This document shows, in pieces, positions 10,276 to 63,820 of a stretch of 64,000 nt of DNA. This stretch comes from Hypanus sabinus. Lineage: Eukaryota. The stretch covers positions 496,001-560,000 of the forward strand of contig NW_026780455.1 in assembly GCF_030144855.1 (NCBI RefSeq). Reading direction: 5' to 3'. Both the position numbers and the translations under genes were made by a program. The first letter of the stretch is position 1; each line of letters opens with the position of its first letter. Below the pieces are notes generated by a model, which saw only the letters and a program-made list of their open reading frames with translations, did not search any database and was not told the DNA's origin.

Positions 10276-10456
10276 ATGGATTATAATCTGCGAAATGCAT
10301 CGCGCAACGCTACGGGAAATGCGAAGAATGTTTTCTGGGCGTTTCAATATCTTGTTGCATATTCCGAAGGGCAAACGTTGGACTATCGAATCACTATGGC
10401 GCTTGTGACATTCCAAGTGGTTTACTACCCTGTACTCGCCATTGTAGCTCTTCCTG
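10276..10456 (+). pseudogene. GPR139/142-like GPCR copy A, exon 1 (N-terminus and start of TM1)
   Basis: MDYNLRNASRNAT...VYYPVLAIVALP + G|gtaagt; 181 nt, phase 1; N-glycosylation sequons. Confidence 0.85.
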
Positions 10457-10599
10457 GTAAGTGTCTCGTCTCTTCCTCATGAATACATTGAAAAGTTTAA
10501 GTCAGCTTCTCGTTCATCCCTGTCCTCTAACGACTCGCTAATTGCAAGACAGGTCTTTCCAGCCGGTATCACTTAAGCTAACATCGGCTGAATGGATTT

Positions 10600-11340
10600 C
10601 AGTAACTAAGTACCCCACGCAAATCTTATTGTGAAAGTAAGGAGGCATGTGATCCTCGGGGTCATTGCTGTGTGGAGCCAAAAATGGCTTGCCCACAGAA
10701 GGAAACGTGTTGTTGTAGACTGTCATATTCTGCATTGTAGAGCAGGGCCTCTTGCACCCCTATCCTTTCTGAGTTTTATAAATGACCTGGATGAGGAAGT
10801 GGAGCGATATGTTCGTCAATTTGCCAATTATACAATGGGTGGGGAGGGCTGTCAGATGTTCCAGCGGGATTTTGATTGGGGGCGAAATTGCGCTAAGAAG
10901 AGCCAGATGAATTTCAACATAGATCAATATCAGGTCGTTCATTTTGTTTGGTCAAATATGATGGCAGAATATGGTGTTACCTGAATTAAACAAATAAATA
11001 ACTCCCACCACCATCTCACCAGTTAAAAAGTATGAGGATACATTGCATCATCTATCACCGACACAAATAGTGCGGAGGAAACTGACAGCATGCAGAGCGA
11101 TATTAATGTGCTCACCGAATGTACCAGCGTCTGGCAGATGGAGTGCAAAGGTGGTAAATGCAAGGTGATCCACTTGGGAAGGGCAAATGGAAGAACGGAA
11201 TATTATTTAAGTGGTAAACGATTGCAGTATGCTGCTGTGCGGAGGGACTTTGGAGTGCTTGTGTTTGAATTGCAAAAGGTTGGTTTGCAGGTGCAGCAGC
11301 CTATCAGGAAGGCAAATGGGATGTTCGCCTTTGTTGCTAA
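10600..11340 (+). mobile_element. CR1 RT fragments in the intron of copy A
   Basis: FINDLDEEV..QFANYT and VWQMECKGGKCKVIHLGRAN..QQPIRKANGMFAF. Confidence 0.8.
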
Positions 11341-11375
11341 TTGTGTGTTAATGGTCTTTACCTCCCTCCACACAG

Positions 11376-12317
11376 TTAACGTGGTGACAATAGTCATCCT
11401 GTCGCGGGGAAAGTGCGGCCTCTCCAAAGGCGTCACAAGGTACCTGGTTGCCATGGTAGCAGCGGATCAGCTGGTCGTTCTCTTCAATCTTGTATTGAGC
11501 AAGATTCCGTGGAGCTACATGCCAGGAGAGCTTTTACGCTGGTCGTATCGTGTTCCCGTGTGTAATATCCACGCTGTCATATCCTACGGCGTCACGGACT
11601 GTTCTGTCTGGTTCACCGTCGCTTTCACCTTTGATCGGTTTGTCGCCATTTGTTCACAGAAGTTGAAACGAAAATACTGCACCGGGAGAGCGGCGGCTCT
11701 GGTTCTGGGGACAGTGACTGTGCTGAGCTGCGTAAAGAGCATTTTCTGGTACTTTTATCTCGATGGGACATATGCGTTGATACTTTCGACAGTGCTCTGT
11801 ATCCGTTCTGATCGTTTTTTCAAATCACAAGATAACATATTTGAACTAATTCATTCCCTCCTCACCCCAATATTCCCCTTTGTCCTCGTTCTGTTGCTGT
11901 TTCATTCTCCTGTTAAACACTTTAACCATCAGGCACGTCTTAGTGACCAGCCGAGCCCGGAAGAGACTCCGTTGTTCGCGCGATGGCGAGACGCCCGCCG
12001 ACCCGGAGATGAAGAACCGCAGGCAGTCCCTCCTGTTACTGCTGGTGATGTCGGGGAATTTCATCCTGTTGTGGGCGCTGCTGACGGTGTCCTCCGTATG
12101 GGAGAGCCTGTTTATTTACATTAACGTGTTGCCCCCCAGTTCTCTGCGGGAGCTGGGCTACATCCTGCAACTTCTGAGCTGCTGCACCAACACGGCCCTT
12201 TACGCCGTGGTCCAGGCCAGGTTCAGGGTGCAGTTGAAGGAGACGGTGATATCGCCCTTCAGTCTCATTGCAAAGTTCACAAGGCGTTGTCAGGACCGCA
12301 TTAAAGTGCTCCCATAA
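11376..12317 (+). pseudogene. GPR139/142-like GPCR copy A, exon 2 (TM1-TM7), frameshifted by a 16-nt insertion
   Basis: cacag|ttaac VNVVTIVILSRGKCGLS..FDRFVAIC..; insertion gttctgttgctgtttc at 11888-11903 in TM5; the other frame continues to CTNTALY and a stop at 12317; removing the insertion gives 368 aa. Confidence 0.9.
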
Positions 12318-12539
12318 CGCCACGATCTATCCCAATTCCTCACTGGCATGTGCGTTTCCATTACTGTTGTGGACAGTCCCGATTAGCTCCCGCCCTCCCC
12401 CACTCCATGCAGTACCACCATCGGGGACGTCTTCCCAATCTGCCTCCACTGCCCTCCTTCCAGTTCACGTTATTCATGAGTTCCGTCTAACGCCTTCTTC
12501 ATTTCCACCAAGTCCGTGCTTCTACTATTATAAAGCATA

Positions 12540-12905
12540 TAACCATATAAAAAATACAGCACGGAAACAGGCTATCTCAGCCTTTCTAGTCCGTGTCGAA
12601 CGCCTAATCTCACCTCGTCCCATCGACCCGCACTCAGCCCATAACCCTCCGTTCCTTTCCTGACCATATACGTATCCAATTTTACTTTAAATGACAATAC
12701 CGAAACTGCCTCAACCACTTCTACTGGAAGCTCGTTCCACACAGCTACCACTCTCTGAGTAAAGAAATTCCCCCTCGTGTTACCCCTAAACTTTTGCCCC
12801 CTAACTCAAATCATGTCGTCTTCTTTGAATCTCCCCTACTCTCACTGGAAAAATAGCCTATCCACGTCACTCTGTCTATCCCCCTCATAACTGTAAATAC
12901 TTCTA
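12540..12905 (-). mobile_element. CR1 3' end inserted in the 3' flank of copy A
   Basis: Reverse complement of a CR1 3' UTR and ORF2 end (aaccatataa..cagcacggaaacagg..); absent from the same position in copies B, C and E. Confidence 0.75.
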
Positions 12906-13478
12906 TCGCCCCCATTCAACCTTCTGCGCTACAAAGAATAAAGACCTAACTTTTTCTACATTTCGCTGTAACTTAGGTGCTGAAACCCAGTTAACATTCT
13001 GGTAATTCTTCTTTGTATTCTCTCTGTATGCATGCCTATCTGTGACATCACCATCGCACTCCGACCGTTGTGACCTGCCGGTATTCTGTGCGGCTGGAAA
13101 TTCTCCTCCGTAACGCCCGATGTACTCGGTCTCTTTCCTTCGGCGAGAACTTTTAGTTCCAGCAGCAGCAGCCATCGAATGTTTCGGGAAGAAGCTTACC
13201 GTGGACGGACTGCAAATCTCCACTTGGTCCGGAGTTCTTTGGAATCTCTCTGTTACCTCGAGAATAATTCAGTAACTCGGACTCGTAAAACCACTCGTCA
13301 AATCGTCTTTCCTCCGTCTGGAGCACCAATTGCCATCGAGATGTCTTCTGGGAAAGAGAATAAATTTTGCTCACTTTGAGCAGCGGAGGTCCAACTTGTC
13401 CAATCAGATTAAATATATTGAGTATGTGAGGAATGTGGCTGTTGAGGAAAGGGCGGCGGATGTCCTTGTTTTATTGAG

Positions 13479-13481
<3 letters not shown>

Positions 13482-13520
<39 letters not shown>
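13482..13520. repeat. (CA)n microsatellite
   Basis: ~19 units. Confidence 0.98.
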
Positions 13521-13523
<3 letters not shown>

Positions 13524-13616
13524 AACTGAACACCACTCCACTCCCTTTGCAATTTTTGGTCATTTTTTCTCCATTCTTTCTGAAACATTGTTTACCTTTG
13601 CATTTACATAATAATA

Positions 13617-13658
<42 letters not shown>
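13617..13658. repeat. (ATT)n microsatellite
   Basis: ~14 units. Confidence 0.98.
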
Positions 13659-13659
13659 G

Positions 13660-13900
13660 TAGTTTGTCCTTTACGCTGCCCATTGTCTTGCTTATTAATT
13701 ATTGTACTGCCTTGCACTGTTTGGTGCACTTTATGTAGCCCCGTGTAGGCCTGAAGTCTAATGTAGTTTTGTGTTGATTCACGTATTCTAGTGTGGTTTT
13801 GTGTTGTTTCATGTCGCACCATGGTCCTGAAGGATTTTTGCTTCGTTTTTACTGTGTACTGTCCCAGCATTTGTGGTTAAGATGACAATAAAAGCGACTT
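13660..13900 (+). mobile_element. Rex1/Babar-type LINE 3' UTR fragment
   Basis: Similar to the 3' tail at 39850-40000 (tgcactgtt(t)tgtgcactttatg..gtagttttgtgttg). Confidence 0.55.
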
Positions 13901-14039
13901 GATTTGACGTTAACTGAGATTTGGCACGAGATGTGAGATGCTGTCAGAAGTATGGTTCAGCAGAAACACTTCCAATTGGTATGGATACACCTGAGCTTTT
14001 TCCCGCTGACTATTCAGGAATAGCATCTCTCACTGAAGT

Positions 14040-22929: not shown

Positions 22930-23104
22930 ATGGATCAGCAAAATGCATCGCGGAACGCTGCGGCATCAGTAAGGAATATTGACCGGGCGTATCCATATCT
23001 GGGTGAAAATCCTAAAGGAATACCGTTGGACTTTCGAATCTATCAGGCGCTTCGGACCGTCAAAATGTTTTTTTATCCTGTACTCGCCATTGTAGCTGTC
23101 CCTG
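22930..23104 (+). pseudogene. GPR139/142-like GPCR copy B, exon 1
   Basis: MDQQNASRNAAAS...FFYPVLAIVAVP + G|gtaagt; 175 nt. Confidence 0.85.
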
Positions 23105-23639: not shown

Positions 23640-24500
23640 TCTTCCGCCTGCACAAATAGTGCAGTAGAATCTGGGAGCATGCAGACGGATATCGATTGTT
23701 TAAGCGAAAGTATTACCCTTTAGTCGGACGCAGGACAATGCTGCTAAAGGCGAGGGAAGGAGAAATGGAAGAGCAGAATATTGTTCAGTGAAAATTGATT
23801 GCAGTATGTTGCCATGTGGATGCACTTTAGAGTGTTTGGTCTTCAATCGCAAAAGTTTGGTTTGCAGCAGCAGCAGGCTAACAAGAAGGCAAATGGGATA
23901 TTGTCCTTCATTGCTACAGGGGTGAATTTAAGAGCAGGGAGGTTATGCTGCAACTGCACAGGATACAGATGAGGCGGCTGCTGGAGTACTGTTTGCAGAG
24001 ACAGTCTCCTGACTTGAGGAGCGATTTACTGGCGTTGTGGTCGTTTCCGCATTTTGATTCCAAACATGAGGTGCCGAGACTATATGCGGAGACTGAGTCG
24101 CCCGGAACTGCACACACTGGAATTCAAAAGGATCAGATACGATCTTTTAGCAACATGTAAAAATACGATAGAGATAGGTAAAACAAGGACAGGAAAATTG
24201 TTTCCACTGTTGGTTGAGACTAGAACAGGCCGACGTAGGCAGCAGCTATGGGGAGTGAAATTCGGACGGGAGGAAATGCTTTTCACAGAGCGTGGTGCAA
24301 CTGTGGAATGCTCTGCCCAATGGGGAAGTGGAAATATACTTCAGAAAAGATTAGATATATTTTGCCTACTAGGGGTATTAGGGTTGGTTGGGGTTGGGAG
24401 GCAGTCAGATGGAAATGAGTCTATGGTCAGATCAACCAGGATCATGTTCAATGACGGAACATGGCAGTCCGAACAGATGGACTATTCCGACTAGTATTTC
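23640..24500 (+). mobile_element. Decayed CR1 ORF2 3' fragments in the intron of copy B
   Basis: KKANGILSFI..FKSREVMLQL..LHTLEFKRIR..LFPLLVETRT remnants. Confidence 0.75.
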
Positions 24501-25231: not shown

Positions 25232-26108
25232 TGAGCGTGGTGACAATCGTCGTTCTGTCGCGGGGACAGTGCGGTCTCTCCAAAGGCGTCACAAGGTACC
25301 TGGTTGCCATGGTAGCAGCGGATCAGTTGGTCGTTCTTTTTGATCTGTTATTGAACAAGGTTCCGATGAGTTACATGCCAATCGAGGTTTTCCTCTGGTC
25401 GAATCGTGTTCCCGTGTGTAATATCCACGCAGTCATGCTCTACGCCGCCACGGACTGTTCTGTCTGGTTCACCGTCACTTTCACCTTTGATCGATTTGTT
25501 GCCATTTGTTTTCAGAACCTGAAACGAAAATACTGCACCGAGAGAGCTGCGGCTCTGGTTTTGGGGACAGTGACTGTGCTGAGCTGCCTAAAGAACATTT
25601 TCTGGTACTTTTTGCTCGTTGGGTCATATTCGATGTCACGTTGGTTCATGCTCTGTTTACGTAGTTTTCGTTTTCCCCCATCTCAGGAGACAATATTTGT
25701 ACTTATTCATTCCCTCCTCACCCCAATATTCCCCTTTGTCTTGATTCTGCTGTTAAACAGCTTAACCATCAGACACGTCTTAGTGGCCAGCCGAACCCGG
25801 AGATGAAGAACCGCAGGCAATCCCTCCTGTTACTGCTGTTGATGTCGGGGAATTTCATCCTGCTGTGGGCGCTGCTGACGGTGTATTCCGTATGGGATAG
25901 CCTGTATTTTTACATTAACGTTTCTCCCCCGGATACTCCTCGGGAACTGGGTTACATGCTTCAACTCCTGAGCTGCTGTTCCAACACGGCTCTTTACGCC
26001 GTGGCCCAAAACAGGTTTAGGATGCAGTTCAAGGAGACAATGAAATCTCCCTTGCGTCTAATGACAAAGTGCGCTCGGCTATGTCAGGAGAGCATTGATC
26101 CTCAGTGA
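25232..26108 (+). pseudogene. GPR139/142-like GPCR copy B, exon 2, frameshifted by a 46-nt deletion in ICL3
   Basis: ccag|tgagc VSVVTIVVLSRGQCGLS..; 877 nt versus 923 nt in copy E; junction at cccgga 25796-25801. Confidence 0.92.
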
Positions 26109-31429: not shown

Positions 31430-33860
31430 CTGAACCCAACACGGCCATTTTTCAATTGCTCGGAGTATTCGGAATATTTAGAGCTGTCTAGTGTTGCAGC
31501 TTTCTTGAGAATTATGTAAGTATTTTATCTGTAAGGATAATTTTAAAGCATTTTTGTAGTGACTGCGATGATCCTCTTTATAAATATAATGATTGGAACA
31601 ATATATAGCCTATTACTGTTTCATCCTTTTCCACATTCCTCTTTTAACCCAGACATAGTGTTCACGTCTTCGTTAAGCCGTTATGACATTTGACGTGTAA
31701 AAACACCCTGCATGCCATTTTTTTTTATCAAAAATCGTTTGACTTTTCCTAAAGTGATACAAAATGCGCCATATTGAAAATATATTAAAAATGTATACTT
31801 TTGTACATTCAATATGTTCCGGGTCAAGTTTGACCCGTATATATTGTAATGGGTTTTATATCCACCAGTGTGGTTTGTGGAAATATTAAAACTGTAATAC
31901 TGTATATGCCATGCCTGTGTACATCTTTATGGTCTGCAGTGATAGAGTTCAAGTGAAACCGTGACACTGTAACAAGACCTGCCTGCGTTCGCACCACATT
32001 TGCCCAGGTTCCCACCGAGACAGGCACCTGTTGGTCTTTGCCGTCCCCTTTTTACTTGCAGGTCGCTGTCCTTTCCGCCAGTACATGCTCAGCAACCCAC
32101 GAAAATACGGAATAAAGTTAAGGGTAGCCTGTGATGTACGTTTCAGTTATGCTTGAAATATGGAAGTATGTTAAAGTATGTTATTGGAAGACAGCTGGGG
32201 TAGCCACGGAGCGAAAACAAAGCATGCACGTCGTGTAAGAGATAACGGAAGGGCTAAGAGGACACAACGTTATCTGAGACAACTTCTTGACATCTCCGGA
32301 TCTTGGTCAGGTGCTCCTTAAGTGAAAAATCACAATGGTGGGCACTGTGATTCGGAACGTGCCTGAGCTGCCACTTGCTGTGATTGCAACAAGGGGGAGA
32401 GACGTCTTGTCTTCCAAGTTTGTTTTCACCCATGACACCACAGTTGTCTCGTATATGCACTAGAAGAACACGAATGTCATCCTTATGAGCACAGTACATG
32501 AGCGGGCAGAGGTCAGCGCTCAGGAGGGCAGAAAACCAGCCATCATCCTTGACTACAATGTCAACAAAGGAGGAGTGGACAACCTTGATAACGTAACAGG
32601 CACATACAGCTGCAAGAGGAGAACAGCCCGCTGGCCTCTCGCTATATTCCATAGCATCATTGACATATCGAACTACAACGCCTTTGTCACATGGAGTGAG
32701 TTCACCCCTACCTGGAGGGCAACCAAGAAGAAAAGAAGAAGGTTATTTCTGGAGGATTTTGGCAAGACAACTTTTATGCAAAGGCGACACCACCTTCCCC
32801 GACCAACGGCTTCAGCAGCAGGGTCAGGGCAGTGCCGCGAGCTGAACCTGGTCCTGATCTACAAGAAGTCCCACAAGAAGCCAACACAAGAGGACAGAAG
32901 AGAAGGAGATGCAACTTCTGCTAGGCAAAAAAGAAATACAAAACTGGGACAACTTGCTGCAAATGTGGGTAACTCATATGCAAGGGCCACACACGCTAGG
33001 TATAAGATCACTCCTTTGAATGCGAATACTAATTTTCAAGTAGCATTTTTTTTCTTTGTTGGTTAAATGTTAATTAATGCTGAGATAATAGTTAAAATTT
33101 GTAATTGCATAATAGTTAGAAGGATATTTCATGATCAAGCAGTGCTGACAGTCTTTGATGGTTGCAGCGGTTACAAATGTTTATATAATAAACACTACAT
33201 TTCCGGAATGTTCTTGCCATTTTCAGTATCAACAAACATATTTAATTCATTGTGGTTGTTATGTTTTCATGTCTCAGTTAAAACTGGACATGCTGTTCTG
33301 TGGTAGTAGATGCTATTTCGCCAGAAACGATTCAGAAAAATACTTTCCCTACTCTCTGAAACAATACTTAAGGATTAATCATCCATTTATTAATGTCAGC
33401 TAGGCTGTTCATATATTCTCAAAAGAACTGTCGTTCAAAATATTGTATAGTCACTTGTTATTAGGGGATTCTTAGACCGGTCAAACTTGACCCGGATCAT
33501 ACTGCGAAGAAATAGATTATGAACAGTATGTAAGGGTGAATTCAGAGTATTGTACTGTTTTTAAAACACTGATTTCTGTTTGTTTTGGGTGCTTTCAACG
33601 ACTTTCTATATTGAATAAGTTGTTGTTCTTTGTCTTTCATCTGTTACGATATCCAGACGGTTTTATGGATTGTTCCATCTGTAATTACTGCTCGGTAGTC
33701 ATATAATTTGTTGGAATTTGACACTTGTATTGATTGTCAGCTGTTGTGTCTTTTCTGTTTCTCAGCAGCTGGTGAGACCTCATGTCCGCACATTGCCAAT
33801 CACGCTCATTGCGCATTCTGTCAGAAATTTCAGTCTATCCTGGTGATGTCTAACATCGTG
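31430..33860 (-). mobile_element. R4/Dong-type non-LTR element C-terminal fragment (restriction-like endonuclease), split by a piggyBac insertion
   Basis: Minus strand ..RAVITDGTIH..DIV..; joining the two flanks across TTAA restores ..YSE|LKEE.. followed by ..YIVPI.. and ..KKAATLDSS. Confidence 0.75.
31648..33536 (+). mobile_element. piggyBac (PGBD4-like) DNA transposon, internally deleted, copy 1
   Basis: Left TTAA+cccagacatagtgttc; right gaacagtatgtaaggg+tgaa; subterminal palindromes gggtcaagtttgaccc (~31820) and ggtcaaacttgacccg (~33479); transposase QYM..P.KYGIK, DYNVNKGGVDNLD..RWPLAIF. Confidence 0.9.
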
Positions 33861-36157: not shown

Positions 36158-36332
36158 ATGAATCTGCAAAATGACTCGCGGAACGCTGCGGGATCTGTAA
36201 GGAATATTTTCTGGGGGTATCCATATTTGGATAAAAATCCTAAAATGGTATCGTTTGGCATTCAAATCACTCCGGCGCTTGACACCGTCAAAATGATTTA
36301 CTATCCTGGACTCGCCATTGTAGCTGTTCCTG
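36158..36332 (+). pseudogene. GPR139/142-like GPCR copy C, exon 1
   Basis: MNLQNDSRNAAGS...IYYPGLAIVAVP + G|gtaagt; 175 nt. Confidence 0.85.
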
Positions 36333-37807: not shown

Positions 37808-38324
37808 TGAACGTGGTGACAATCGTCATTCTGTCGCGGGGAAAGTGCGGTCTCTCCAAAGGTGTCACAAGTTACCTGGTTGCCATAGTAGCAGCGGATC
37901 AGCTGGTCGTTCTCTTCGATCTGCTATTGAGCAAGATTCCGATGATTTACATGCCATGGAAGGTTTTCGACTGGAGTTTAAGTGTTCCCGTGAATAATAT
38001 TCCCGCCGTCATACTCTATGCTGCCACCGCAGGCAATCCCTCCTGTTACTGCTGGTGATGTCGGGGAATTTCATGCTGCTGTGGGCGCTGCTGACTGTGT
38101 ATTCCGTATGGGAAAGCCTGTATATTTATTTTAAACCTAAACCCCCGAATACTCTGCTGGAACTGGGCTACATTTTTCAGCTGCTGAGCTCTTGCACAAA
38201 CACGGCCCTTTACGCCGTGGCCCAGTCCAGGTTCCGGCTGCAGTTCAAGGAGACGATGAAATCTCCCCTTCGTCTAATGACAATGTTCTCTCGTCGTTGT
38301 CAGCAGAGCATTAATCCTCAGTGA
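37808..38324 (+). pseudogene. GPR139/142-like GPCR copy C, exon 2, with an ~406-nt deletion (TM3 to ICL3) and frameshift
   Basis: cacag|tgaac VNVVTIVILSRGKCG..YAAT joined directly to ..ccgcaggcaatccc (NRRQS region) at ~38027; 517 nt versus 923 nt. Confidence 0.92.
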
Positions 38325-44599: not shown

Positions 44600-46375
44600 A
44601 ATTGGAAATGATTAGGTAGTTTAAGGTAAACGAACCTTTAGGCAGCTGTGTTCACAATTTAGTTGAGATCAAAAATATAAATTGGGAAATCTGAAGTCCT
44701 ACGCAGCAGTATTTTAGCTGCATAAGATAAATTACAGTAATATCAGCAAGGTCTTTCCAAAATGAAAATGGAAGGAGACACTGTCAGGATTGTCTGCAGG
44801 GCAGAAATGCGGTGAGTCTTTGGTAAAGCAGAGGAAAGTGCAGGATTCATGCTTTCTGAAAACAAACCAATAAATACTCAAATGACGAATTAGCACGATC
44901 GTGGCAAAACGTAAACGCAAAAGTTAAGGCGTATAATCTGTGTCGTGTTTTATAAGGCAGAGATTTCTTGATTTTTTGAATAAGCAAATGTGTAATGGGA
45001 AGCCAGCTGGGGGAGCCACGGAGAGAAAACAAGGCATGTGCGTCCTGTTCGAGTTGACAGAAAGACTAAGAGGACACAATGTGACCTGTGATAACTTGTT
45101 CACATCTCAGGAACTAGGTCAGCACTCCTGAAGAAGAAATTCACAATGGTGGGCACTGTGAGGGGGGACAAGCCTGAGCTGCTACCTGCTGTGTTTGCAA
45201 CAAGGAGGAGAGACATATTGTCTTCCAAGTTTGCTTTCACCCATGACACCTCAGTTGTCTCGTACATGCAAAAGAAGAACAGGAATGTCATCATTATGAG
45301 CACATTACATCACGTTGCAGAGATCAGCGCTCAGGAGGACAGAAAACCAGCCATCATCCTTGACTACAATGCCAACAAAGGAGAAGTGGACAACGTTGAC
45401 AAAGTAACAGGTACATACAGCTGCAAACAGAGAACAGCCCGCTTCCCTCTCGCCATATTCCATAATATCATTGACATATCGACCTACAACCCCTTTCTCA
45501 TACGGAGTGGGCTGACCCCTACCTGGAGGGCAAGCAAAATGAACAGTAGGAGGTTATTTCTGGATGATTTTGTTAAGACTACTTTTACACAAAGGCGACA
45601 CCACTTTCCCCGACCTGTCGCCTCAGCAGCACTGGTAAGGGCAGTGTGACGATCTGAACCTGACCCTGATCAACAACAAGTCCCACAAGAATCCAACACA
45701 AGGGGGCAGAACAGAACGAGATGTAACGGTTGCTCTGCAGAAAAGGACGGTAAAGCACCGAGAACTTGCTGCAGATGTGGGAAACACATATGCAAGGGCC
45801 ACACATGCACGGTTTTCTACACTGCTTTGAATGCGAAGACTAGTTTTCAGATAGCAATTTTTTTGTATTGTTTGTTGGTTAAATGTTAGTCGTTCATGGT
45901 GACTTAATAGTTAATAGTTACAATTATATAGTAGTTATGACGATACTCTACGATAGAACAGTGAGGACATGTTTGATGGTGGTAGTGATTATAAATGGTT
46001 ATATAATAAAAGTCCAGAGTTGCAGAATGTTCTTGCCATTTCCATTTGCAGTTTCATCAAGTATATTTGTATCATTATGGCAGTTATGTTTTCATGTCTT
46101 AGGTAAAATAGGGATGATATTGAGTGATAGTAGATGCTTTTTCTCCATTAAAGAATTTTAGTTTTTTTCTCCAAAAACCACTCACCCTGCTCTCTGAAGC
46201 ATTTATTGGGGATGAATCACCAATTTAATAATGTCAGATACGCTATTTATGCATTCTACAAATATCTGTATTTCACAATTTGGTATAGACACTTGTTATG
46301 AGGGGATTCTTGGGCCTGGTCAAACTTGAACCAGACCATACTGTGAAGCTATAGAATAGGAACAGTGTGTAAGGG
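44600..46375 (+). mobile_element. piggyBac (PGBD4-like) copy 2; right end intact, left end not seen
   Basis: VTCDNLFTS, MVGTVRGDKPEL..DYNANKGEVDNVD..; C-terminal cysteine-rich domain RCNGC..TCCRCGKHICKGH; right TIR gaacagtgtgtaaggg+TTAA (46376-46379). Confidence 0.9.
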
Positions 46376-46379
46376 TTAA

Positions 46380-46810
46380 TTCAGCATATTGTAGTATTTG
46401 GAAAGCATTGGTTTCTGTATGCTTTGTGTGCTTGTAATGGCTGTATCTGTTGAATAAGTTGTTGTTCTTCTTTGGCTGTCGTCTGTTACTATATCCGGAC
46501 GGTTATTATAGATTGTCCCGTCTGTAATTACTGCTCGGTAGTCATATAATTTGTTCCAATATGGCTCTTCCATTTATAGCTTCCTATCCCTTTGTACGTC
46601 AATGATTTGGATGAAAAATTTGATAGCTTTATGGAGATCAGCCATTTCCAGCTCCAGCTCCTTCACGCGGATTGTACTTGTTGTGTCCTTTCTGTATCTC
46701 AGCAGCTGGTGAAACATCATGTCCAGGCATAGCCATTCACGCTCATTTCTCATTTGCTCGGAACTTTCGGACCATCCTGGTGGTGTTTACTATTGTGGCC
46801 TACTGAAGAT
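46380..46810 (-). mobile_element. R4/Dong RLE fragment (duplicate of 33537-33860)
   Basis: NNRPDIVTDDSQRRTTTYSTDTAIT..KY. Confidence 0.75.
46579..46675 (+). repeat. 97-bp exact direct duplicate of 46892-46988
   Basis: gcttcctatccctttgtacg...cttcacgcggattgt identical in both places, 313 bp apart. Confidence 0.95.
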
Positions 46811-47917: not shown

Positions 47918-48098
47918 ATGGATCGTAATCTACGAGATGCAACGCACAATGCTGCGGGCATTGCGAAGAATATCTTATGGGCGTATCAACTCCTAGTTGA
48001 AAATTATGAAATACTGAGGTTGGATTTTCGTATCACATATGTTCTGAGCATTTTCCAACTGGTTTACTACCCTGTAATCGCCATTGTAACAGTTCCTG
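47918..48098 (+). pseudogene. GPR139/142-like GPCR copy D, exon 1; splice donor mutated (G|ttaagt)
   Basis: MDRNLRDATHNAAG...VYYPVIAIVTVP; 181 nt; TT instead of GT at 48099-48100. Confidence 0.85.
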
Positions 48099-49059: not shown

Positions 49060-51260
49060 TCAAACCTGCCTTCTAACGACACGCCAATTGCATGGCAGGA
49101 CTCTCAAATCGATATCGCTTCTGGAAAGAACGTCTGAATTCGCTTGATAAGGTGCTCCATGCAAGGCTTCAGAAATTAAAGCGGCATGGGATCCAAGGAG
49201 ACATTGCTTTGAGAATTCAGAACTGGCAGGCCCACAGAAGGAGAATTGAGGTTGCAGAGAGGTCATATTCTGCATGGAGTTCGGTGATCTTGGGATCTTG
49301 GTGTTCGGGTGCATAGGGCACTCGATGCCGCTACGCAGGTTGACCCGATGGTGAAGAAGGTATACATTAAACGTGAGATTGAGTTTAAGAGCCAAGAGGT
49401 TGTATTGCAGCTATATAGGACCCTGGTCAGACCCCACTTGCTTTAGTGTGCTCAGTTCTGTTTGCCTCACTGCAGGGAGGATGTGGAAACGATAGAAATG
49501 GGGCAAATGATACTTACAAGTATGTTGCTTGGATTGTGGAGCATGCATTATGATAATAGGCTAAGTGAACTCGGCCTATACCCCTTAGAGCGACGAAGGA
49601 TGAGAAGTGACATTATTGCGGCGTGCAAGATGATGGGAGGCATTGAGCATGTGGATAGTCAGAGGTTTTTTCCCCCAAGAGCGGAAATGGCTAGCACGAG
49701 AGAGCACAGCTTTTAGCTGCTTGGAAGTAGTTTTTCAGGATTAAGGCGTCAGGAGTAAGTTTTTTTTTACGCAGAGTGGTGAGTGCCTGGACTGGCGTGC
49801 CGGCGACAGTGGTGGAGACTGACCCGATAGGACCTTTTAAGAGACTTCTGGAAAGTTACATGGAGCACAAAAAAATGCAACGCCATGGGTAACCCAAGGC
49901 AATTTCGAAGGGAAGGACATGACTGGCACGGCGTTGTGGAAAAATGACTCAGTATGTTTCTATGTGTCCATGCATTGAGGAATATACCTTGCCAGCTTTC
50001 GAGTTGGGTCGGGGCTGTATTAATAGCATTTGCAGAGGTTTGGTGGAGTGGGCCGTTTCGCTGAATCAATCAATCAATCAATTAATTAATTAATTAAATC
50101 GTCTCACCAGTTATAGAGCACGAGGTCACATAGGCATCTTCACTGCCATGATCTTTCGTCAGCACAAACACTGCTGAGGAAACTGCGAACCTGCAGAGTG
50201 TCATAAACAGGCTAGGAGAATGCACTAGCGTCTGGTATATGGGGTACAAAGTTGGAAAATGCGCGGTCATCTACTTGGGAAGGACAAATGGAGGAAGAAG
50301 TAATAAACGACTGCAGTACGTTGCTGTGTATAGGGACTTTATTTGAATCACAAAAATATTGGTTTGCAGGTGCAGCAGGCTATCAAGAAGGCAAATGGCA
50401 TGTTCGCCTTTGTTGCCAGAAGGATTGAATTTTCGAGCAGGGAGGTTATGCTGCAATGGTACAAAGTGCTGGTGAGGCGGCGTCTGGAGTACTAATCATA
50501 GAAAACATACAGCACAATACAGGCCCTTCGGCCCACAATGTTGTGCCGAAAATGTCCCTACCTTAGAAAGTACTGGGCTTACTCAGAGCCGTGTACTTTT
50601 CTAAGCTGCATTTACTCATCCAAAAGTTTCGTAAAGGACACCATCGTATCCACATCCCCCACCGTTGCTGGCAGCCCATTCCACGAACTCACCATTGTCT
50701 GTGTAAAAACAATTGCCCCTGACATCGCCTCTGTACCTACTCCCCAGAACCTTAACATCATGTCCTCTTGTGGCAGAAATTTCAGCTCATGAGAAAAAGC
50801 CAGTGACTACCCACATGATCAATGCCTCTCATTTTCTTCTACAACTCTATCAGCACTGTGCAAGTCTGGTTTCCAGACTTGAGAAAGGATAAACTGGCTT
50901 TGTATGAAGTTCACTGGTTGATTCTGGAGATGAGGAGGTTCGACTATAACGAGAAATTCAGTTCCCTTGGACTGTCCTCGCTGGAATTCAGAAGGATGAG
51001 ATCATATAGAAACATAAAAAAATTATGAAAGGGATAGATAAGACAGAGAAGGAGAATTGTTTCCACTGGTAGGTGAGACGAGAACCACGGGACAAAGCCT
51101 GAAGATTCTGGGGAGTAAATTTAGGACGGTGATGAGGGGGAACTGCTTCTCCCAGCGAATGGGGGATCTCTGGAATGCTCTGCTAATTCAAGCAGTGGAG
51201 TCTACCTCAATTGATATATTTAATACAGCCTGGCATATCTTTTTTGCATAGTGGTTATGA
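49060..51260 (+). mobile_element. Cluster of CR1 fragments in the intron of copy D, with an opposite-strand CR1 3' end nested at ~50495-50830
   Basis: KLKRHGIQG..WIQNW, RRRMRSDII, MFPLVGETRT remnants; reverse-complement 3' end aatcatagaaaacatacagcacaatacagg. Confidence 0.8.
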
Positions 51261-52098: not shown

Positions 52099-53023
52099 TT
52101 AACGTGGTAACAATCGTCACCCTGTCGCTGGGTAAGTGCGGTCTCTCCAAATGCGTCACAATGTACCTGGTTGCCATGGTAGCAGTTGATCAGCCGGTCG
52201 TTCTCTTCGATCTGGTATTGAGCAAGATTCCGGGTACCTACATCCCAATTGAGGTTTTGCTCTGGTCGCGTCGTGTTCCTGTGTGTAATATCAACGCCTT
52301 CGTATCTTATTCTTCAACGGAGTGTTCTGCCTGGTTCACGGTCACTTTCACCTTTGATCGATTTGTCACCATTTGTTTTCAGAAGATGAAACGAAAATAC
52401 TGCACCGGGTAAACGGCGACTCTAGTCCTCGGGACAGTGACAGTACTGAGCTGTGTAAAGGACGTTTTTTGGTACTTTTTGCTCGATGGGTCATATTCGG
52501 TGTTAAGTTTGTCCGTGCTATGTGTGCGTTCTTTTTTGTTTTTCCCTATCTCAGGAGGCAGCAATTCTACTGATTCATTTCCTTCTCACCCCAATATTCC
52601 CTTTTGTCCTGATTCTCCTGTTCAACAGTTTAACCATCAGGCACGTCTTCCTGGCCAGCCGAGCCCGGAAGAGTCTCCGTGGTTCGAACGATGGCGAGAT
52701 GCCCGGCGACCCGGAGATGAATAACTGCAGTCAATCCCTCCTGTTACTGCTGATGATGTCGGGGAATTTCATCCTGTTGAGGGCGTTGCAGACGTGGTAT
52801 TCCATATGGGATAGCTGTTTTTTTTTACATTCACGTGATACCCCTAAAGTCCCTGCGGGAGCTGGGCTACATGCTGGAACTGCTGATCTGCTGCACCAAC
52901 ACGGCACTTTACGCCGCTGTCCAGGCCAGATTCAGGGTGCAGCTGAAGGAGACGGTGAAATCGCCCTTAAGTATCACGGCAAAGCTGACTCGCTGTTGTC
53001 AGTACCGCAGGAATTTTCAATGA
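52099..53023 (+). pseudogene. GPR139/142-like GPCR copy D, exon 2, with a nonsense codon and frameshifts
   Basis: cacag|ttaac VNVVTIVTLSLGKCG..; TAA at 52410-52412 (Lys in copy E); frameshifts near 52540 and 52830. Confidence 0.92.
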
Positions 53024-58200: not shown

Positions 58201-60200
58201 TAAACAAGGACAAGACCAGATCATATGAGTCAATGAAGCAACATCAGAATGACATCTTTCGCAGGTTGAATCAACATGAGAATAAAGTCGAGCCAGTTTA
58301 TCCTTAGACATATGAGCTCTATGTACAACCTTAAATTGTATTAGGGCATGCTTAGCACAAATAGAGGACCAATTTACCAATAATAAAAAAGTTTCCCATT
58401 GCTCAGTGGATATACGACAATGCAACTCTTCTTGCCATTCCTTCTTAATTTTTTCAATACTGCATACTCTGTAGTCGGTACCTCTATATATTGATTCAGA
58501 CAAAAAAACCGTCCAGAGCTTTAAAAGTATGGGAGTCCCAATCAACACGTGGAAATTTAAAATCCCCTACAATCACAACTTAATGTTGCCTACAGTTGTC
58601 TGATATATCACTTCAGATTTGCTCCTCCAATTCTCACGAACTATTGGGTGGTCTACCATACAATCCCATTCATGTGGTAATATATTTCCTGTTTCTGAGA
58701 TCTGCCCATATGGCCTCGGTGGCAAACCATCTAAACAGTCTTGCCTCGGCACTGCTGTAACGTTTTCCCTGACTAGCAATGCCACACCCCAACCAATCCT
58801 TAATCCTTCTGTCGCTATCACGGCTAAAACATTGGAACCCTGGGACATTAATCTGCCAGTCCTGTACCTCCTGTAGCCAATTTTCACTGGTGCCTACAAT
58901 GTCATAATTCCACGTGTCAATCCATGCACTCAGCTCGTCGGCCTTCTCCACAATACTTCTTGCATTGAAATAGACACACCTCAGAATGTAATTACCACCA
59001 CGCACATCCCTTCTATTTGTGACTTTACATGAAACTTTGACCTCAATTATTTTCACTCCTGCTCCATTATCTACTCTGACACTCTGATTCCCATGCCCCT
59101 GCAATTCTATCCTACCGTCCTCCAATAGTACTAACAAATCTCTCTGCAAGGATATTGGTTCCCCATATTTCAGTTGTAATCCGTCTCTCTTGTAAAGGTT
59201 GCATCTGCCCCAGAAGATGTGCAAGTGATCCTGAAATCTGAAACCTTACACCCTACTCCAGTTCCTCAGCAACGCGTTCATCCAGAGCATCCTATTCTTA
59301 CAAACACTGGCACGTGGCACAGGTAGCAATCCTGAGATTACCACCCACGAGACCCTACTTTTTAAATTCCTACCAAGCTCTCTCTCCGCACTCTTCAGTT
59401 CCTCCTCACGCTTACTTCCTACGTCATTAGATGTGTACTATGACATCTAACAGCTCACCCCCCCATTTCAGAATGTGACGCGATCATAGATATCCCTGAC
59501 CCTGACTCCCGGGAGGGGACAAACCATCCGAGAATCTCTGTCGCGACCACAGAACATCCTGTCTCTACCACCATCTGTCGTATCTCCTATCACTACCGAT
59601 CTCCTCTTCTTCCCCCCACACTTCTGCACTGCAGAACAAGACTCAATGCGAGTGATCTGAGCTGTGCAGCTTGTTCCCTATAGGTCATCGCCCCCAACAG
59701 TATCCAAATCGGTATACTTGCTGTGAGCGGAATGGCCACAAGGGGACGTCGCTCTGTCTGCCTTCCCCCTTTCCTCGCCTGACGGTAACCCAATTACATG
59801 TGCACTGCTCCTTTGGGGTAGCCAACTCCCTGTAGCTACTATCTATAAAATTCTCATTCTGCCGAATGATCCGGAGGTCATCCAGTTCCTGCTCCACTTC
59901 CGTAAAGCGGTTTGTTAGGGTTTGTAGCTCTATACACATCTTGCAAGTATCGTTGTCAGGGGCACCGGAGGTCTCCCTGACTTCCCACATCCTGAGAAAG
60001 GAGCATTCCAACAACCTGTCTGGCATTCTTTGTACTCTAAACAAACAAATCAAAACTTACCAGAACCTACCCTTGTCTCTGTCTGTTCACGCCGAAGCCT
60101 GTTGAACCAAAGCCGTCCTACTCTGAATCAGTCCACTCCGACTATTATCAGTAATCAATTTGCGAATTTGAGAGTGAGGTTGTTGTTGTGGATCTCTTTA
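55256..60200 (-). mobile_element. Near-full-length, decayed CR1 LINE with a nested L1 insertion
   Basis: 3' (ttctatgg)n at 55256-55275; RT GNYRPISL..QQAFVRGRSCLT; APE RCVYFNARSIV..; ORF1 esterase and CxxC..CxxC coiled coil (59685-60053); 5' end approximate. Confidence 0.92.
57559..58455 (-). mobile_element. 5'-truncated L1/Tx1-clade insertion with a 15-bp target-site duplication
   Basis: TSD aatactgcatactct at 57544-57558 and 58456-58470; ORF2 C-terminus SSICAKHALIQFKVVHRAH..CERC..HMIWSC; A-rich tail with aataaa. Confidence 0.95.
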
Positions 60201-60379
60201 ATTAGATTTTCATCTTCCCTCCGTTTTGCCGATTCGAAACCACTTGTGATTTGGCTCAGAGCAGATGCAATTACTCATTCGGATCTATTTGTGACGTCGC
60301 TTTGAGGACCCGGACAGGTAAATCTCGGATATTGAATCTGATACTTTTAAACATTCCATGAACATTTCAGCAGATTGTC

Positions 60380-61000
60380 GTAGGCTGTGACAATGTTCAG
60401 AGCAATGCACTTTGTACAACCAACCTCCACACACTTTGCAGCACCCACCCCTTCCAAAAATAGATCAAATGGATTTGCAGTGGGTCCAGTGGAGGGCCAC
60501 GACAAGACCACAGGAATTAAAGGGTTAGCGAATGAAGATCTGGAACAGTACTCGCTGGAGCTTAGAAGAAAGTGCGGAGTTGAGTGTTCACATGGAAATC
60601 TATCAAATGTTAAAACGTCCAAGATAGAGTGGATGTGGAGGATTATTGGAACAGAGGGCACAACTGCAGAATACACTACTTCATAGAGAAAAGAGAAGAG
60701 ATGAAATTTGAACTGCTCGTGAGTGCTGAAGCTAAATAATCGACCGTCTCGAACGGCTATGGAGGTCACGTCTTTGTGGATCTTTAATATGGAGGTTTAT
60801 AAGGAAATTGTGATTTTGGGCGAATAGAATTGAAAAGAGTCTTGATGTAACGACCAGGCAGGCGCGATGGTCGCGAATGGTCTCATTCTGGTGTTTTGTC
60901 TCAGCTTCCTCTGCTCTCGTTATCGCAGCAGAATTACTCAGTTTCACCATCGAGTCTGCTCCGCCATTTCATCACGACTGGTCTAATTTTCCACTTATCT
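60380..61000. mobile_element. Small CR1 (plus) and L2-like (minus) remnants
   Basis: GIKGLANEDLEQYSLE.RR (CR1 C-terminus); RAEEAETKH.. resembling an L2 linker. Confidence 0.45.
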
Positions 61001-62364
61001 CTCAGGTTGTGCTATGCCCGCATCTCTTCATGCCATGACCAATAAGGAACCTATCAAAGTCTGCCTTGATTATATAAAGTGACGTCGACAGCTGCCTGTG
61101 GCGATTTGATAAATTTATCAAAGAAAAAAGTGGTGCATAAAGTTTCGCAAGTTCGGATCGAACACGAGTGATAAAGAAAAGCCAGGAAAGAACTAAAGGT
61201 GGAGAACACGAGAAAATTACAGATGCTGGAAATCCAAGGCAAAACATGGGAAATGCTGGAGGAACACAGAAGGACAGGCTGTATTAATGAAAATTAATAA
61301 ACAGCAGAAGCTTTCGCTGGACACATCTGCAGGAAATTAGGAAATCCGGGAGGATCAATGAAAAGTAATTGACAATCAGGACTTCTTCCCAGGCTCATGT
61401 CTGTCTCAGTATGTCTTCGACGTCATTGGTCCTAATGTACACCACGGGAAGTGAACCCCATGCAGCCACTACTCTCTCTGTAGAGTTCTTGCTCTGTAGA
61501 GATAATTTGAAATTTATTCCCGAAGATCCTCCGTCACTTTCGGTATGTCTCAAAGTAAATGTTTTTATTTGTCTCTTCTGCAAGATTATTAGTCTAATAA
61601 TTTGCATACATCCGAGTCACTGAAGTATATCACAAACCGGAAAAAAAAGTCAGTGTCGAACATTAACTAAAGGTGCGCGTCGGCGTTTCGGTGAGTTTCC
61701 GTACCAATCAGTATCTCAGGAGAAGTTGTTCAGTGCAAGATGTTATTCCTGGAGGGGCCGTGGGGAAAAGCTCTGATGTATCGAGACCAATTGAAGGTAT
61801 TTATGCTGGAGCTTTACTTCTGAGAGCATCTCACGTTTCGTCCCGATCTCAACAAATACATCGTCATGCTTTGCTTTACCTCAGCAATCACCTTCCCACC
61901 TACCCACTGTACTCAATCCAATTAGACAGATTGGACCATTGCTGCACAAAGTGTCTAAGAATTCCTTTCATTTACCATAAGGCAATGCGATGACAGTTGC
62001 TGCTTGAACTGGACGAACCGCGATTGGGCGACAAACATAAAATGCTGGTGGAGCACAGCATACCAGACAACATCTATAAGGTGATGCGCTGTCACTGCCA
62101 CTGGGCGGGTGGTTTTGAGAATGCAAGTTACGTAATTATTCTCAAGGTGACAGACAGATTTCAAAGAATCCCGGATGAAGAGGATCCTGTCTGCGGTAAC
62201 CAGTCTTCCCGAACAGTTCACAGACTGCGGCTCTTGGAAACAAAATTTCCCTGCAGAATAAACAGATGGAGCTACACTGGGCGTACCTGAGCAGGCATTC
62301 GGGCTGCACGGAATACCGGCAGGGCACAAGAGTCGTTTTGCGACAGTGATGTTATAGTTTCACA

Positions 62365-62720
62365 TGCAGATAATGCTGGAATACGTACACAACGCTGGAA
62401 GAACTCAGCAGGTCAGGCAGCATCCGTAAGAAACGAGTAGCCAACGTTCCGGGCCGAGACCCATCATCAGGAATGGGGGTGTGGGAAGAGAGGGCCGAAG
62501 CACAGTAATAGAGGTAGGTGAGGGGGTACGGCCTAGAGGCGCCAGGTGGAAAAACAAACTGAGGAAAGGTAAAGGGGGACGAGTGGGGATAAGCATGAAA
62601 GAACTGTAGAGATAAAGAAGTAGAAATTTGAAGGAGAGATAGGCCGAGAGGGACCTGCGATAGGGGAAGGGGGAGGGGGAGGGAATTACCTGAAATTGGA
62701 GAATTCAATGCTCATGCTAC
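62365..62720 (-). mobile_element. Penelope-like 3' fragment in the 3' flank of copy E
   Basis: gctggaagaactcagcaggtcaggcagcatc..ccgagacccatcatcagg terminus plus GA-rich tract ending ttacctgaaattggagaattcaatg. Confidence 0.65.
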
Positions 62721-62897
62721 CAGGCTGAACGAACAACTCGTAGAGAAAGTCAACTAGAAGGAGCACAGTGGAGGCAGAAAAGTCCCCGAATGTGTATCTT
62801 GGGGAGGGTGGAAGATAATCGGGTTTGACTACAGGTTCAATGTAACTGCACATGACTCTGACGAAATGGGATATTTTGCGGCGGTATGGGAGAAGCG

Positions 62898-63820
62898 TCA
62901 CCGAGGATTCATGCGGTCCTGATAACGCCGAGTGAACTTTGTCATCAGACTGAAGGGAGATTTCACTGTCTCCTTGAACTGCAGCCTGAACCTGGCCTGT
63001 GCCACGGCGTAAAGGGCCGTGTTGGTGCAGCAGCTCAGCAGCTGGAAAATGTAGCCCAGATCCCGCAGGAAAGACGGTGGTGTCGGGGAAATATAAAAAT
63101 ACAGGCATTCCCATATGGAATACACCGTCAGCAGCGCCCACAGCAGGATGAAATTCCCCGACATCACCAGCAGTAACAGGAGGGATTGCCTGCGGTTCTT
63201 CATCTCCGGGTCGGCGGGCTTCTCGCCATCGCACGAACCACGGAGTCTCTTCCGGGCTCGGCTGGCCACTAAAACGTGCCTGATGGTTAAACTGTTGAGC
63301 AGCAGAATCAAGAAGAAGGGTGATATTGGGGTGAGGAGGAAATGAATCAGTTGAATTGCTGTGTCCTGAGATAGGGAAAAACGAAAGGAAAGCATACAGA
63401 GCATGGACGAAGTCGTCACCGAATATGACCCATCGAGCAAAAAGTACCAAAAAATGTTCTTTCCGCAGCTCAGCAGAGTCACTGTCCCCAGAACCAGAGT
63501 CGCCGTTTTTCCAGTGCAGTATTTTCGTTTCATCTTCTGAAAACAAATGGCGACAAATCGATCAAAAGTGAAAGTGACCGTGAACCAGACCGAACAGTCA
63601 GTGGCGGCGTAAAATACGACGGCGTGGATATTACACACAGGAACATGTAATGACCAGAGATAAACCTCAAACAGCATGTAAGTGCCCGGAATCTTGCTCA
63701 ATACCAGATCGAAGAGAATGACCAGCTGATCCGCTGCTACCATGGCAACCAGATACCTTGTGACGCCTTTGGAGAGACCGCACTTTCCCCGGGACAGGAT
63801 GACGATTGTCACCACGTTAA
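62898..63820 (-). CDS. GPR139/142-like class A GPCR copy E, exon 2 (intact TM1-TM7 and stop); exon 1 lies beyond the window end
   Basis: Acceptor ctccgcacag|ttaac; 923-nt uninterrupted frame VNVVTIVILSRGKCGLS..PVCNIH..FDRFVAIC..FILLW..CTNTALY..RMNPR*. Confidence 0.9.

What the first reader, a model, noticed from the sequence alone, without database searches (positions are those of the whole stretch)
10276..63820. Tandem array of orphan GPR139-like GPCRs with hypervariable extracellular faces
Five paralogues share the same two-exon structure, with a phase-1 intron in TM1. ICL1 (LSRGKCGLSKGVTRYLVAMVAADQ), TM3 (SVWFTVTFTFDRFVAIC) and ICL3/TM6 are nearly invariant. In contrast ECL1 (WSYMPGELLRWSYR / MSYMPIEVFLWSNR / MIYMPWKVFDWSLS / GTYIPIEVLLWSRR / GTYMLFEVYLWSLH), ECL2 and the N-termini differ strongly. 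This pattern is expected of a ligand-diversified receptor repertoire under birth-and-death evolution. Its position beside a TCR V segment makes an immune or pathogen-sensing role an alternative to chemosensation. I know of no assigned function for this lineage-specific expansion.
Basis: partly seen in the sequence, partly recalled or inferred. Interest (0 to 1): 0.75.

Follow-up and report, generated by a model that had tools for sequence, protein, structure and literature searches.

The report
Ray GPR139-like receptor array, mostly pseudogenes
This stretch of ray DNA holds five old tandem copies of a cell-surface receptor gene from a very large, apparently unpublished shark-and-ray family; four copies are broken and one looks intact, and what the family senses is unknown.

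Summary
The sequence observation holds. There are five copies of a class A GPCR, in units of about 12.5-14 kb. Four show both coding exons, joined by a phase-1 intron just before N1.50 in TM1.

- Copy 1: +16 nt in TM5.
- Copy 2: -46 nt in ICL3.
- Copy 3: -406 nt, removing TM3 to ICL3.
- Copy 4: two +1 frameshifts, a TAA stop, a lost splice donor, and W6.48R.

Only copy 5's main exon is intact, and its first exon lies beyond the window.

The family is huge in sharks and rays, where NCBI labels it "probable GPR139". GPR139 is the nearest solved receptor (profile E 4.7e-15), but the family lacks R6.51, the GPR139/142 signature, so it is a relative and not an orthologue.

Change is concentrated outside the cell. 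dN/dS is about 1.0-1.2 in the loops and 0.35 on the inner face. The loop value is not significantly above 1, and the deep pocket is conserved. That fits a birth-and-death receptor repertoire but does not prove ligand-driven selection. The neighbouring TCR V segment gives no support for an immune role. No RNA evidence or paper was found. Earlier agents of this scan reported the same family on other stretches of this genome.

The parts
10276..10456 (+). Copy 1 exon 1: ATG, N-terminus with N-glycosylation motifs, and the first half of TM1. It ends in the first base of a split codon.
   Evidence: Open from the ATG, followed by donor G|GTAAGT. tblastn to the Hypanus sabinus P0006 N-terminus gives E 2e-19.
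11376..12316 (+). Copy 1 exon 2, a pseudogene. A 16-nt insertion at 11881-11896 in TM5 shifts the frame, and there is a further +2 nt at 12305. D2.57 is changed to N.
   Evidence: Alignment to copy 5, frame translations and invariant-residue check.
11046..11337 (+). LINE reverse-transcriptase fragment in the intron of copy 1, next to the acceptor. It creates a misleading 344-aa chimeric ORF at 11090-12124.
   Evidence: ORF list. Homologous fragments lie in the introns of copies 2 and 4, at 23651-23916 and 50147-50416.
22930..23104 (+). Copy 2 exon 1, an open frame with an intact donor.
25232..26108 (+). Copy 2 exon 2, a pseudogene. A 46-nt deletion at 25794/25795 in ICL3 shifts the frame into an immediate stop. 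N1.50 is changed to S.
36158..36332 (+). Copy 3 exon 1, an open frame with an intact donor.
37808..38324 (+). Copy 3 exon 2, a pseudogene. A 406-nt deletion at 38025/38026 removes TM3 through ICL3 and shifts the frame. C3.25 is changed to N.
47918..48098 (+). Copy 4 exon 1. The frame is open but the splice donor has changed from GT to TT.
52099..53023 (+). Copy 4 exon 2, a pseudogene. There are +1 nt insertions near 52532 and 52816 and a TAA stop at 52410-52412. W6.48 is changed to R, and 9 of 61 family-invariant residues are lost.
62898..63820 (-). Copy 5 exon 2: intact, 307 codons plus stop. It keeps 60 of 61 family-invariant residues and has an intact acceptor. Its exon 1 must lie beyond base 64000.
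   Evidence: Pfam 7tm_1 E 5e-17.
4000..4398 (+). Neighbouring V-set (TCR V-like) ORF. It is not part of the receptor array.
   Evidence: Pfam V-set E 1.9e-11.

Best explanation
Shown: the window holds an old tandem segmental duplication. Four units run head-to-tail, 12.5-14 kb apart, and a fifth is inverted. Each unit carries a two-exon class A GPCR gene. The gene belongs to a family that sharks and rays have multiplied enormously. Its nearest characterised relative is GPR139, of which it is not an orthologue. In this window the array is largely dead. Four copies were disabled independently, and one keeps an intact main exon with almost all family-invariant residues.

Inferred: family members act as receptors with a common signalling machine. 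ICL1, the DRF region, ICL2, ICL3, TM6, TM7 and helix 8 are conserved, as is the deep core (D2.57, Y/F3.33, T3.36, W6.48, Q7.42). The recognition surface is variable and is made of the N-terminus, ECL1-3 and the outer helix tips. Copies are gained by local duplication and lost by decay, which is birth-and-death evolution. Because R6.51 is missing, the ligands are unlikely to be bound in the way docking suggests GPR139 binds aromatic amino acids. A conserved deep pocket under variable loops points to ligands read at the vestibule, or to loops that are simply weakly constrained. The tissue and the ligands are unknown.
For: - Five copies and their lesions.
- Duplication units are alignable through introns and flanks, with K 0.16-0.35, similar to exon dS of 0.26-0.37.
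- The same units align with Mobula and Hypanus loci at 70-76% identity, and the window's copies interleave with those genes in the tree.
- The intron position is conserved across elasmobranchs.
- Family size and taxa: 1851 clusters with E<=1e-5, and all of the best 120 are elasmobranch proteins named 'probable GPR139'.
- Nearest solved receptor: GPR139 at E 4.7e-15, against 1.8e-9 for the next.
- R6.51 is replaced by L or F, and the acidic pocket residues of GPR139 are not kept: with PMC8807744.
- Omega gradient: loops 0.95-1.20, outer TM halves 0.48-0.68, inner face 0.35. It is the same among six intact genes as among the window's copies. N-terminus omega is 0.9.
- Family entropy is 2.18 bits in ECL and 0.50 in inner TM.
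- The AF2 model has seven long helices plus helix 8, placed where I had labelled them.
Against: - No RNA evidence for any copy.
- Exon 1 of the only intact copy is not visible, and that copy is not among the annotated proteins returned, so it too may be non-functional.
- Loop omega is not significantly above 1.
- Synonymous divergence is about half as high in the conserved segments, which is not explained.
- The AF2 model has low confidence (mean pLDDT 62.8).
- Pocket positions were transferred from GPR139 by numbering offsets, without a structure-based alignment.
Confidence: 0.65

Rival explanations
1. Relaxed constraint only. The loops and the N-terminus vary because they are weakly constrained, as in many GPCRs, and because most local copies are decaying pseudogenes. 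On this view there is no ligand diversification and this locus has no function.
For: - Four of five copies are broken.
- Loop omega is 0.95-1.20 with confidence intervals that include 1.
- N-terminus omega is 0.9.
- Positions matching GPR139's ligand contacts are no more variable than other outer-TM positions (p=0.29).
Against: - The same gradient is seen among six intact genes from three genomes.
- Inner-face omega of 0.35 shows long purifying selection after duplication.
- Loop dN (0.39) is about equal to or above the non-coding divergence between units (K 0.16-0.35).
- Hundreds of intact models are kept in many species.
Confidence: 0.25
2. Concerted evolution. The constant segments (ICL1-TM2, ICL3-TM6) are kept alike by gene conversion between paralogues, and this exaggerates the constant-versus-variable contrast.
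For: - Third-position differences are 0.04-0.10 in ICL3-TM6 against 0.25-0.45 elsewhere.
- dS is lower on the inner face than on the outer one (0.23 against 0.35, p=0.015).
- Nominally significant shared tracts cluster at codons 181-224.
Against: - No pair survives correction for 55 tests (best p=0.0045).
- The same low synonymous divergence is seen between window copies and a Mobula gene (0.03-0.06), which recent within-genome conversion cannot produce.
- Distant family members show only a mild dip.
Confidence: 0.15
3. Immune or pathogen-sensing receptors, suggested by their position beside a TCR V segment.
For: A V-set ORF lies at 4000-4398, about 6 kb upstream of copy 1.
Against: - It is a single V-like ORF in transposon-rich DNA.
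- Nothing links it to the receptor genes.
- The family occurs in many other clusters of this genome and on many contigs in other species, so the adjacency is most simply chance.
Confidence: 0.04
4. True GPR139/GPR142 orthologues or recent duplicates that sense aromatic amino acids as GPR139 does.
For: - NCBI names.
- GPR139 is the best PDB match.
- Shared features: a YYP..LA...P.N TM1 motif, N5.58, aromatic 3.33, and no proline at 7.50.
Against: - R6.51 is stated to occur only in GPR139 and GPR142 and to be essential for ligand recognition (PMC8807744). It is L or F in all 92 family members.
- The D2.61, E3.29 and E3.32 equivalents are R/S, A and L.
- A single sequence matches GPR139 only at E 1.4e-6, close to muscarinic and opioid receptors.
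Confidence: 0.03

Closest known systems
GPR139 and GPR142 (class A orphan receptors activated by L-Trp and L-Phe)
   Same: - GPR139 is the nearest solved receptor by family profile (E 4.7e-15, with a gap of more than five orders of magnitude to the next).
- The two align over their full length, including TM1.
- Shared residues: aromatic at 3.33, N at 5.58, W6.48.
- Neither has proline at 7.50.
   Different: - R6.51 is absent (L or F).
- The acidic residues of the GPR139 pocket are absent.
- Position 7.50 is T here and F in GPR139.
- The match is low and only a little better than to other amine and peptide receptors when one sequence is used.
- There are hundreds of copies per lineage, whereas GPR139 is described as a highly conserved vertebrate gene (PMC12208981, abstract seen).
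Vertebrate chemosensory GPCR repertoires that evolve by birth and death (OR, TAAR, V1R/ORA, T2R)
   Same: - Tandem clusters.
- Many pseudogenes beside intact genes.
- Most of the coding sequence lies in one exon.
- A conserved intracellular face and a variable ligand side.
- Lineage-specific expansion.
   Different: - Expression in sensory neurons has not been shown.
- The variable sites lie mostly in the loops and helix tips and not in the deep TM pocket.
- There is a conserved intron in TM1.
- The catshark study found no GPCR among the 50 most specific genes of the 'brain & olfactory epithelium' library (PMC11979771).
Shark V2R/OlfC olfactory repertoire
   Same: It is the one receptor family known to be expanded in sharks, which have very few OR, ORA and TAAR genes (PMC11979771).
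   Different: V2Rs are class C receptors with a large extracellular domain. They are unrelated in sequence and architecture to the family described here.

Membership tests
Class A (rhodopsin-family) GPCR | Match to the Pfam 7tm_1 profile above its gathering score | tested here: met
   PF00001, E 5.2e-17, 62.6 bits against a cut-off of 30.5, residues 51-316 of the copy 5 ORF.
Class A (rhodopsin-family) GPCR | Seven transmembrane helices plus helix 8, and the conserved anchors N1.50, D2.50, C3.25, (D/E)R(Y/F), P5.50, W6.48, N7.49/Y7.53 | tested here: met
   - The AF2 model of family member P0006 has seven long helices and helix 8 (mean pLDDT 62.8).
- All anchors are found in copy 5. Two are variants: DRF in place of DRY, and NTxxY in place of NPxxY.
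GPR139/GPR142 subfamily | Arginine at 6.51, reported as unique to GPR139 and GPR142 and critical for ligand recognition (PMC8807744) | tested here: not met
   L in copies 1, 2, 3 and 5, and Q in copy 4. Among 92 family members it is F in 69, L in 21 and Y in 2 (paper text).
GPR139/GPR142 subfamily | Closest sequence relationship to GPR139 among characterised receptors | tested here: met
   The profile of 27 members scores E 4.7e-15 to GPR139 and 1.8e-9 to the next receptor, AT2R. This shows the nearest relative among solved structures only. It is not a phylogeny.
GPR139/GPR142 subfamily | Other GPR139 pocket residues: D2.61, E3.29, E3.32, F3.33, I3.36, H5.43, N7.38 | tested here: not met
   The family has R/S, A, L, Y/F, T, Y/N/H and G at these positions. 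Only the aromatic at 3.33 is kept. Positions were transferred by numbering offsets.
GPR139/GPR142 subfamily | Non-proline residue at 7.50 (F in GPR139) | tested here: inconclusive
   T at 7.50 (motif NTxxY). Proline is absent, as in GPR139, but the residue differs.
GPR139/GPR142 subfamily | Activation by L-Trp, L-Phe or related peptides | not testable with these tools
   This needs a cell-based assay.
GPR139/GPR142 subfamily | Orthology by phylogeny and synteny with vertebrate GPR139 or GPR142 | not tested
   No true GPR139 or GPR142 sequence was available by reference for a tree. The window holds no flanking single-copy genes.
Birth-and-death sensory-type GPCR repertoire | Tandem clusters mixing intact genes and independently disabled pseudogenes | tested here: met
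   Five units, of which four are pseudogenes with different lesions.
Birth-and-death sensory-type GPCR repertoire | Large, lineage-specific copy number | tested here: met
   1851 clusters at E<=1e-5, and the best 120 are all elasmobranch. Other clusters were reported in this genome (unchecked notes). No per-genome census was done.
Birth-and-death sensory-type GPCR repertoire | Positive selection at ligand-contact sites | tested here: inconclusive
   Loop omega is 0.95-1.20 with confidence intervals spanning 1. Deep-pocket positions are conserved.
Birth-and-death sensory-type GPCR repertoire | Expression in a sensory tissue | tested here: inconclusive
   No RNA run holds the stretch. Only short pieces 90-95% alike were found, in runs whose type is a guess.

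The most novel reading that the evidence does not exclude
This GPR139-related family is a large, unrecognised sensory receptor repertoire of sharks and rays, chemosensory or of another modality. It would make up for their famously small OR, TAAR and ORA repertoires, with ligand specificity set by the variable loops and N-terminus.
Probability: 0.2. Interest if true: 0.85.

Novelty: new member of a known kind. Interest (0 to 1): 0.42.

Why it matters
Sharks and rays have very few classical odorant receptors, and V2Rs are the only expanded family known. In the catshark there are 2 OR, 6 OR-like, 3 ORA and 3 TAAR genes (PMC11979771). A class A receptor family with hundreds of members, restricted so far to elasmobranch records and absent from the literature I could search, is an obvious candidate for an unexplored sensing system.

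This window adds a caution. Locally the family is mostly pseudogenes. The variation lies in the loops and not in the deep pocket. Selection above neutrality is not shown. The name 'GPR139' in the annotations should not be read as orthology, because R6.51 is missing.

Tried and rejected
- **RNA evidence.** The one run search found no RNA holder. The best shares were 0.05-0.22. Laying four runs gave only short contigs 90-95% alike, from relatives or paralogues, so nothing can be said about expression.
- **Tree-based counting of changes.** iqtree2 on this machine does not offer ancestral sequences. I did not try another route. I used pairwise and disjoint-pair estimates instead.
- **Gene conversion.** A GENECONV-style permutation test found no pair significant after correction.
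- **Deep nucleotide constraint in ICL3-TM6.** Distant family members show only a mild dip in third-position divergence, so I rejected a strong family-wide element.
- **Literature.** Searches for GPR139 with shark, elasmobranch or cartilaginous fish, and for 'GPR139-like', found no paper on this family. The catshark sensory paper does not mention it, and no supplements are held for it.
- **Looking beyond base 64000 for copy 5's exon 1.** This was not possible.
- **The 344-aa ORF at 11090-12124.** It is not a gene model. It is a LINE fragment read through into exon 2 up to the frameshift.
- **The 356-aa ORF of copy 5 from 63968.** Its first 49 residues are translated intron.
- **Masked N runs.** 8071-8314 and 8623-8768 were left untouched.


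Full report
**What is in the window.**
A tblastn with the one long receptor ORF finds five homologous copies. Their main exons lie at 11376-12316, 25232-26108, 37808-38324 and 52099-53023 on the + strand, and at 63820-62898 on the - strand. Self-comparison shows that whole units of 12.5-14 kb are duplicated, introns and flanks included, at 70-83% identity. Copy 5 is a rhodopsin-family GPCR (Pfam 7tm_1, E 5e-17).

**Gene structure.**
The N-termini of annotated homologues match short open frames 0.9-4 kb upstream of copies 1-4. Each frame starts with ATG, at 10276, 22930, 36158 and 47918. Each ends ...CCT G followed by GTAAGT, and the main exon follows ...CACAG.
- The same junction is used in NCBI gene models from Scyliorhinus, Heptranchias, Heterodontus, Rhinoraja and Hypanus, so it is ancestral to the family.
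- Copy 5's exon 1 must lie beyond the window end.
- The 356-aa ORF that starts at 63968 reads through the end of the intron and is not the real N-terminus.

**Four of five copies are dead.**
I aligned each copy to copy 5 and read it in all frames.
- Copy 1 has a 16-nt insertion in TM5 (11881-11896).
- Copy 2 has a 46-nt deletion in ICL3 (at 25795) and N1.50S.
- Copy 3 has a 406-nt deletion from TM3 to ICL3 (at 38026).
- Copy 4 has two +1 insertions (about 52532 and 52816), a TAA stop at 52410-52412, a GT>TT donor after exon 1, and W6.48R.
- Of 61 residues invariant in 27 family members, copy 5 keeps 60 and copy 4 keeps 52. Copy 1 has lost D2.57 and copy 3 has lost C3.25.
- The lesions differ between copies, so each died after the duplications.

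**Age and relationships.**
- Exon dS between copies is 0.24-0.37. Non-coding divergence between units is K 0.16-0.35.
- Loci from Mobula and Hypanus sabinus align with the window's units through introns and flanks at 70-76% identity.
- In an ML tree the window's copies are not monophyletic. Copy 3 is sister to a Hypanus gene (support 100), and the rest form a star-like clade with Mobula and Hypanus genes.
- The array is therefore old, about as old as the split of these ray lineages or older.
- Earlier notes of this scan call the genome Atlantic stingray. I did not verify that.

**The family.**
- The word search returned 1851 clusters at E<=1e-5. The best 120 are all from sharks and rays, nearly all named 'probable G-protein coupled receptor 139', with a best identity of 75%.
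- Copy 5 alone matches GPR139 structures at only E 1.4e-6, close to muscarinic and opioid receptors.
- A profile of 27 members matches GPR139 at 4.7e-15, against 1.8e-9 for the next receptor, over the full length including TM1. GPR139 is the nearest solved relative.
[quoted passage not shown] Here 6.51 is L, and F, L or Y in all 92 family members. The acidic pocket residues are not kept. Position 7.50 is T.
- I therefore file the family as a GPR139-related lineage and not as GPR139 or GPR142.

**Where the copies differ.**
I assigned topology from the class A anchor residues. It agrees within a few residues with the helices of an AF2 model of family member P0006 (mean pLDDT 62.8).

| Region | Omega, five window copies | Omega, six intact subfamily genes |
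|---|---|---|
| Whole exon 2 | 0.56 | not computed |
| Extracellular loops | 1.20 (CI 0.69-2.16) | 0.95-1.17 |
| Outer TM halves | 0.48 | 0.68 |
| Inner face | 0.35 | 0.36 |

- The six intact genes are copy 5, three Mobula genes and two Hypanus genes. So the gradient is not an artefact of pseudogene decay.
- Outer dN exceeds inner dN at p<0.0005.
- The N-terminus has omega 0.9.
- Family-wide entropy is 2.18 bits in the loops, 0.97 in outer TM and 0.50 in inner TM.
- Loop omega is not significantly above 1. Loop dN (0.39) is only about equal to or somewhat above non-coding divergence.
- The 17 positions that match GPR139's ligand contacts are no more variable than other outer-TM positions (p=0.29). 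Several are nearly fixed: D2.57 in 92 of 92 members, A3.29, L3.32, T3.36, G7.38 and Q7.42.
- So the 'hypervariable face' means the loops, the helix tips (6.58, 7.35) and the N-terminus. It does not mean the deep pocket.

**An unexplained detail.**
- Synonymous divergence is uneven. Third-position differences are 0.04-0.10 in ICL3-TM6 and 0.14-0.15 at the 5' end of exon 2, against 0.25-0.45 elsewhere.
- The low values also hold between window copies and a Mobula gene. They fade to a mild dip between distant family members.
- A permutation test for shared tracts gave no pair significant after correction.
- Old homogenisation, a locally low mutation rate or nucleotide-level constraint are all possible. 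Part of the 'invariance' of these segments is thus not protein-level selection.

**Expression and literature.**
- No RNA run holds the stretch. Laid contigs were short and only 90-95% alike.
- No paper in the library describes this family.
- The catshark sensory paper reports very small OR, ORA and TAAR repertoires. It found no GPCR among the top 50 genes of the 'brain & olfactory epithelium' library.

**The immune idea.**
A real V-set ORF lies at 4000-4398, about 6 kb upstream of copy 1. Nothing else ties the receptors to immunity, and the family forms many other clusters. I give this reading about 4%.

**Verdict.**
This is one possibly working gene and four pseudogenes of a large elasmobranch-expanded, GPR139-related receptor family that evolves by birth and death. 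It has a conserved signalling side and core and fast-changing loops. Ligand-driven diversification is plausible but not shown, and function and tissue are unknown. Other agents of this scan have already reported the same family on other stretches of this genome.

I did not search or fold a joined exon 1 + exon 2 product.

Noticed in passing
window 4000-4398 (+): An open V-set domain with WYRQ and YFCA motifs, which is TCR V-like. It stands alone about 6 kb upstream of the receptor array. Pfam V-set E 1.9e-11.
   Followed up: partly
window 32179-33734 and 44991-46577: piggyBac-type transposase fragments (DDE_Tnp_1_7, E 2.6e-8 each) lie at matching places in two neighbouring duplication units and are 79% identical. 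The element was therefore inserted before those units were duplicated.
   Followed up: partly
window 11046-11337, 23651-23916, 50147-50416: The same LINE reverse-transcriptase fragment sits in the intron of copies 1, 2 and 4, so it is older than the duplications. In copy 1 it lies next to the acceptor and gives a chimeric ORF. A Heptranchias NCBI model (P0028) likewise begins with LINE-derived residues fused at the exon 2 boundary, probably an annotation artefact.
   Followed up: partly
L002 3170-3349, L008 3598-3774, L007 3323-3498: The Mobula NCBI models P0001 and P0003 start at an ATG inside the intron and miss an intact exon 1 that lies 2.2-2.7 kb upstream. The gene of P0002 has a frameshifted exon 1. 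So some 'intact' annotated family members are truncated or doubtful models.
   Followed up: partly
window exon 2 codons 181-230 of all copies (for example 63280-63130 on the - strand in copy 5): Synonymous third-position divergence is 3-8 times lower in ICL3-TM6 than in the rest of the exon, also between the window copies and a Mobula gene. The gene-conversion test was not significant, and the cause is unknown.
   Followed up: partly
window 62686-63546 (-): A 286-aa ORF is open in the +1 frame over copy 5's exon 2. The same frame is open for long stretches in other copies. It is probably a by-product of composition, and I did not test it.
   Followed up: no
L009 3660-4581 and 9996-10918: The Hypanus sabinus scaffold holding P0007 carries a second family copy 6 kb away with a 1-nt deletion and many in-frame stops. 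This is another pairing of an intact gene with a pseudogene.
   Followed up: partly
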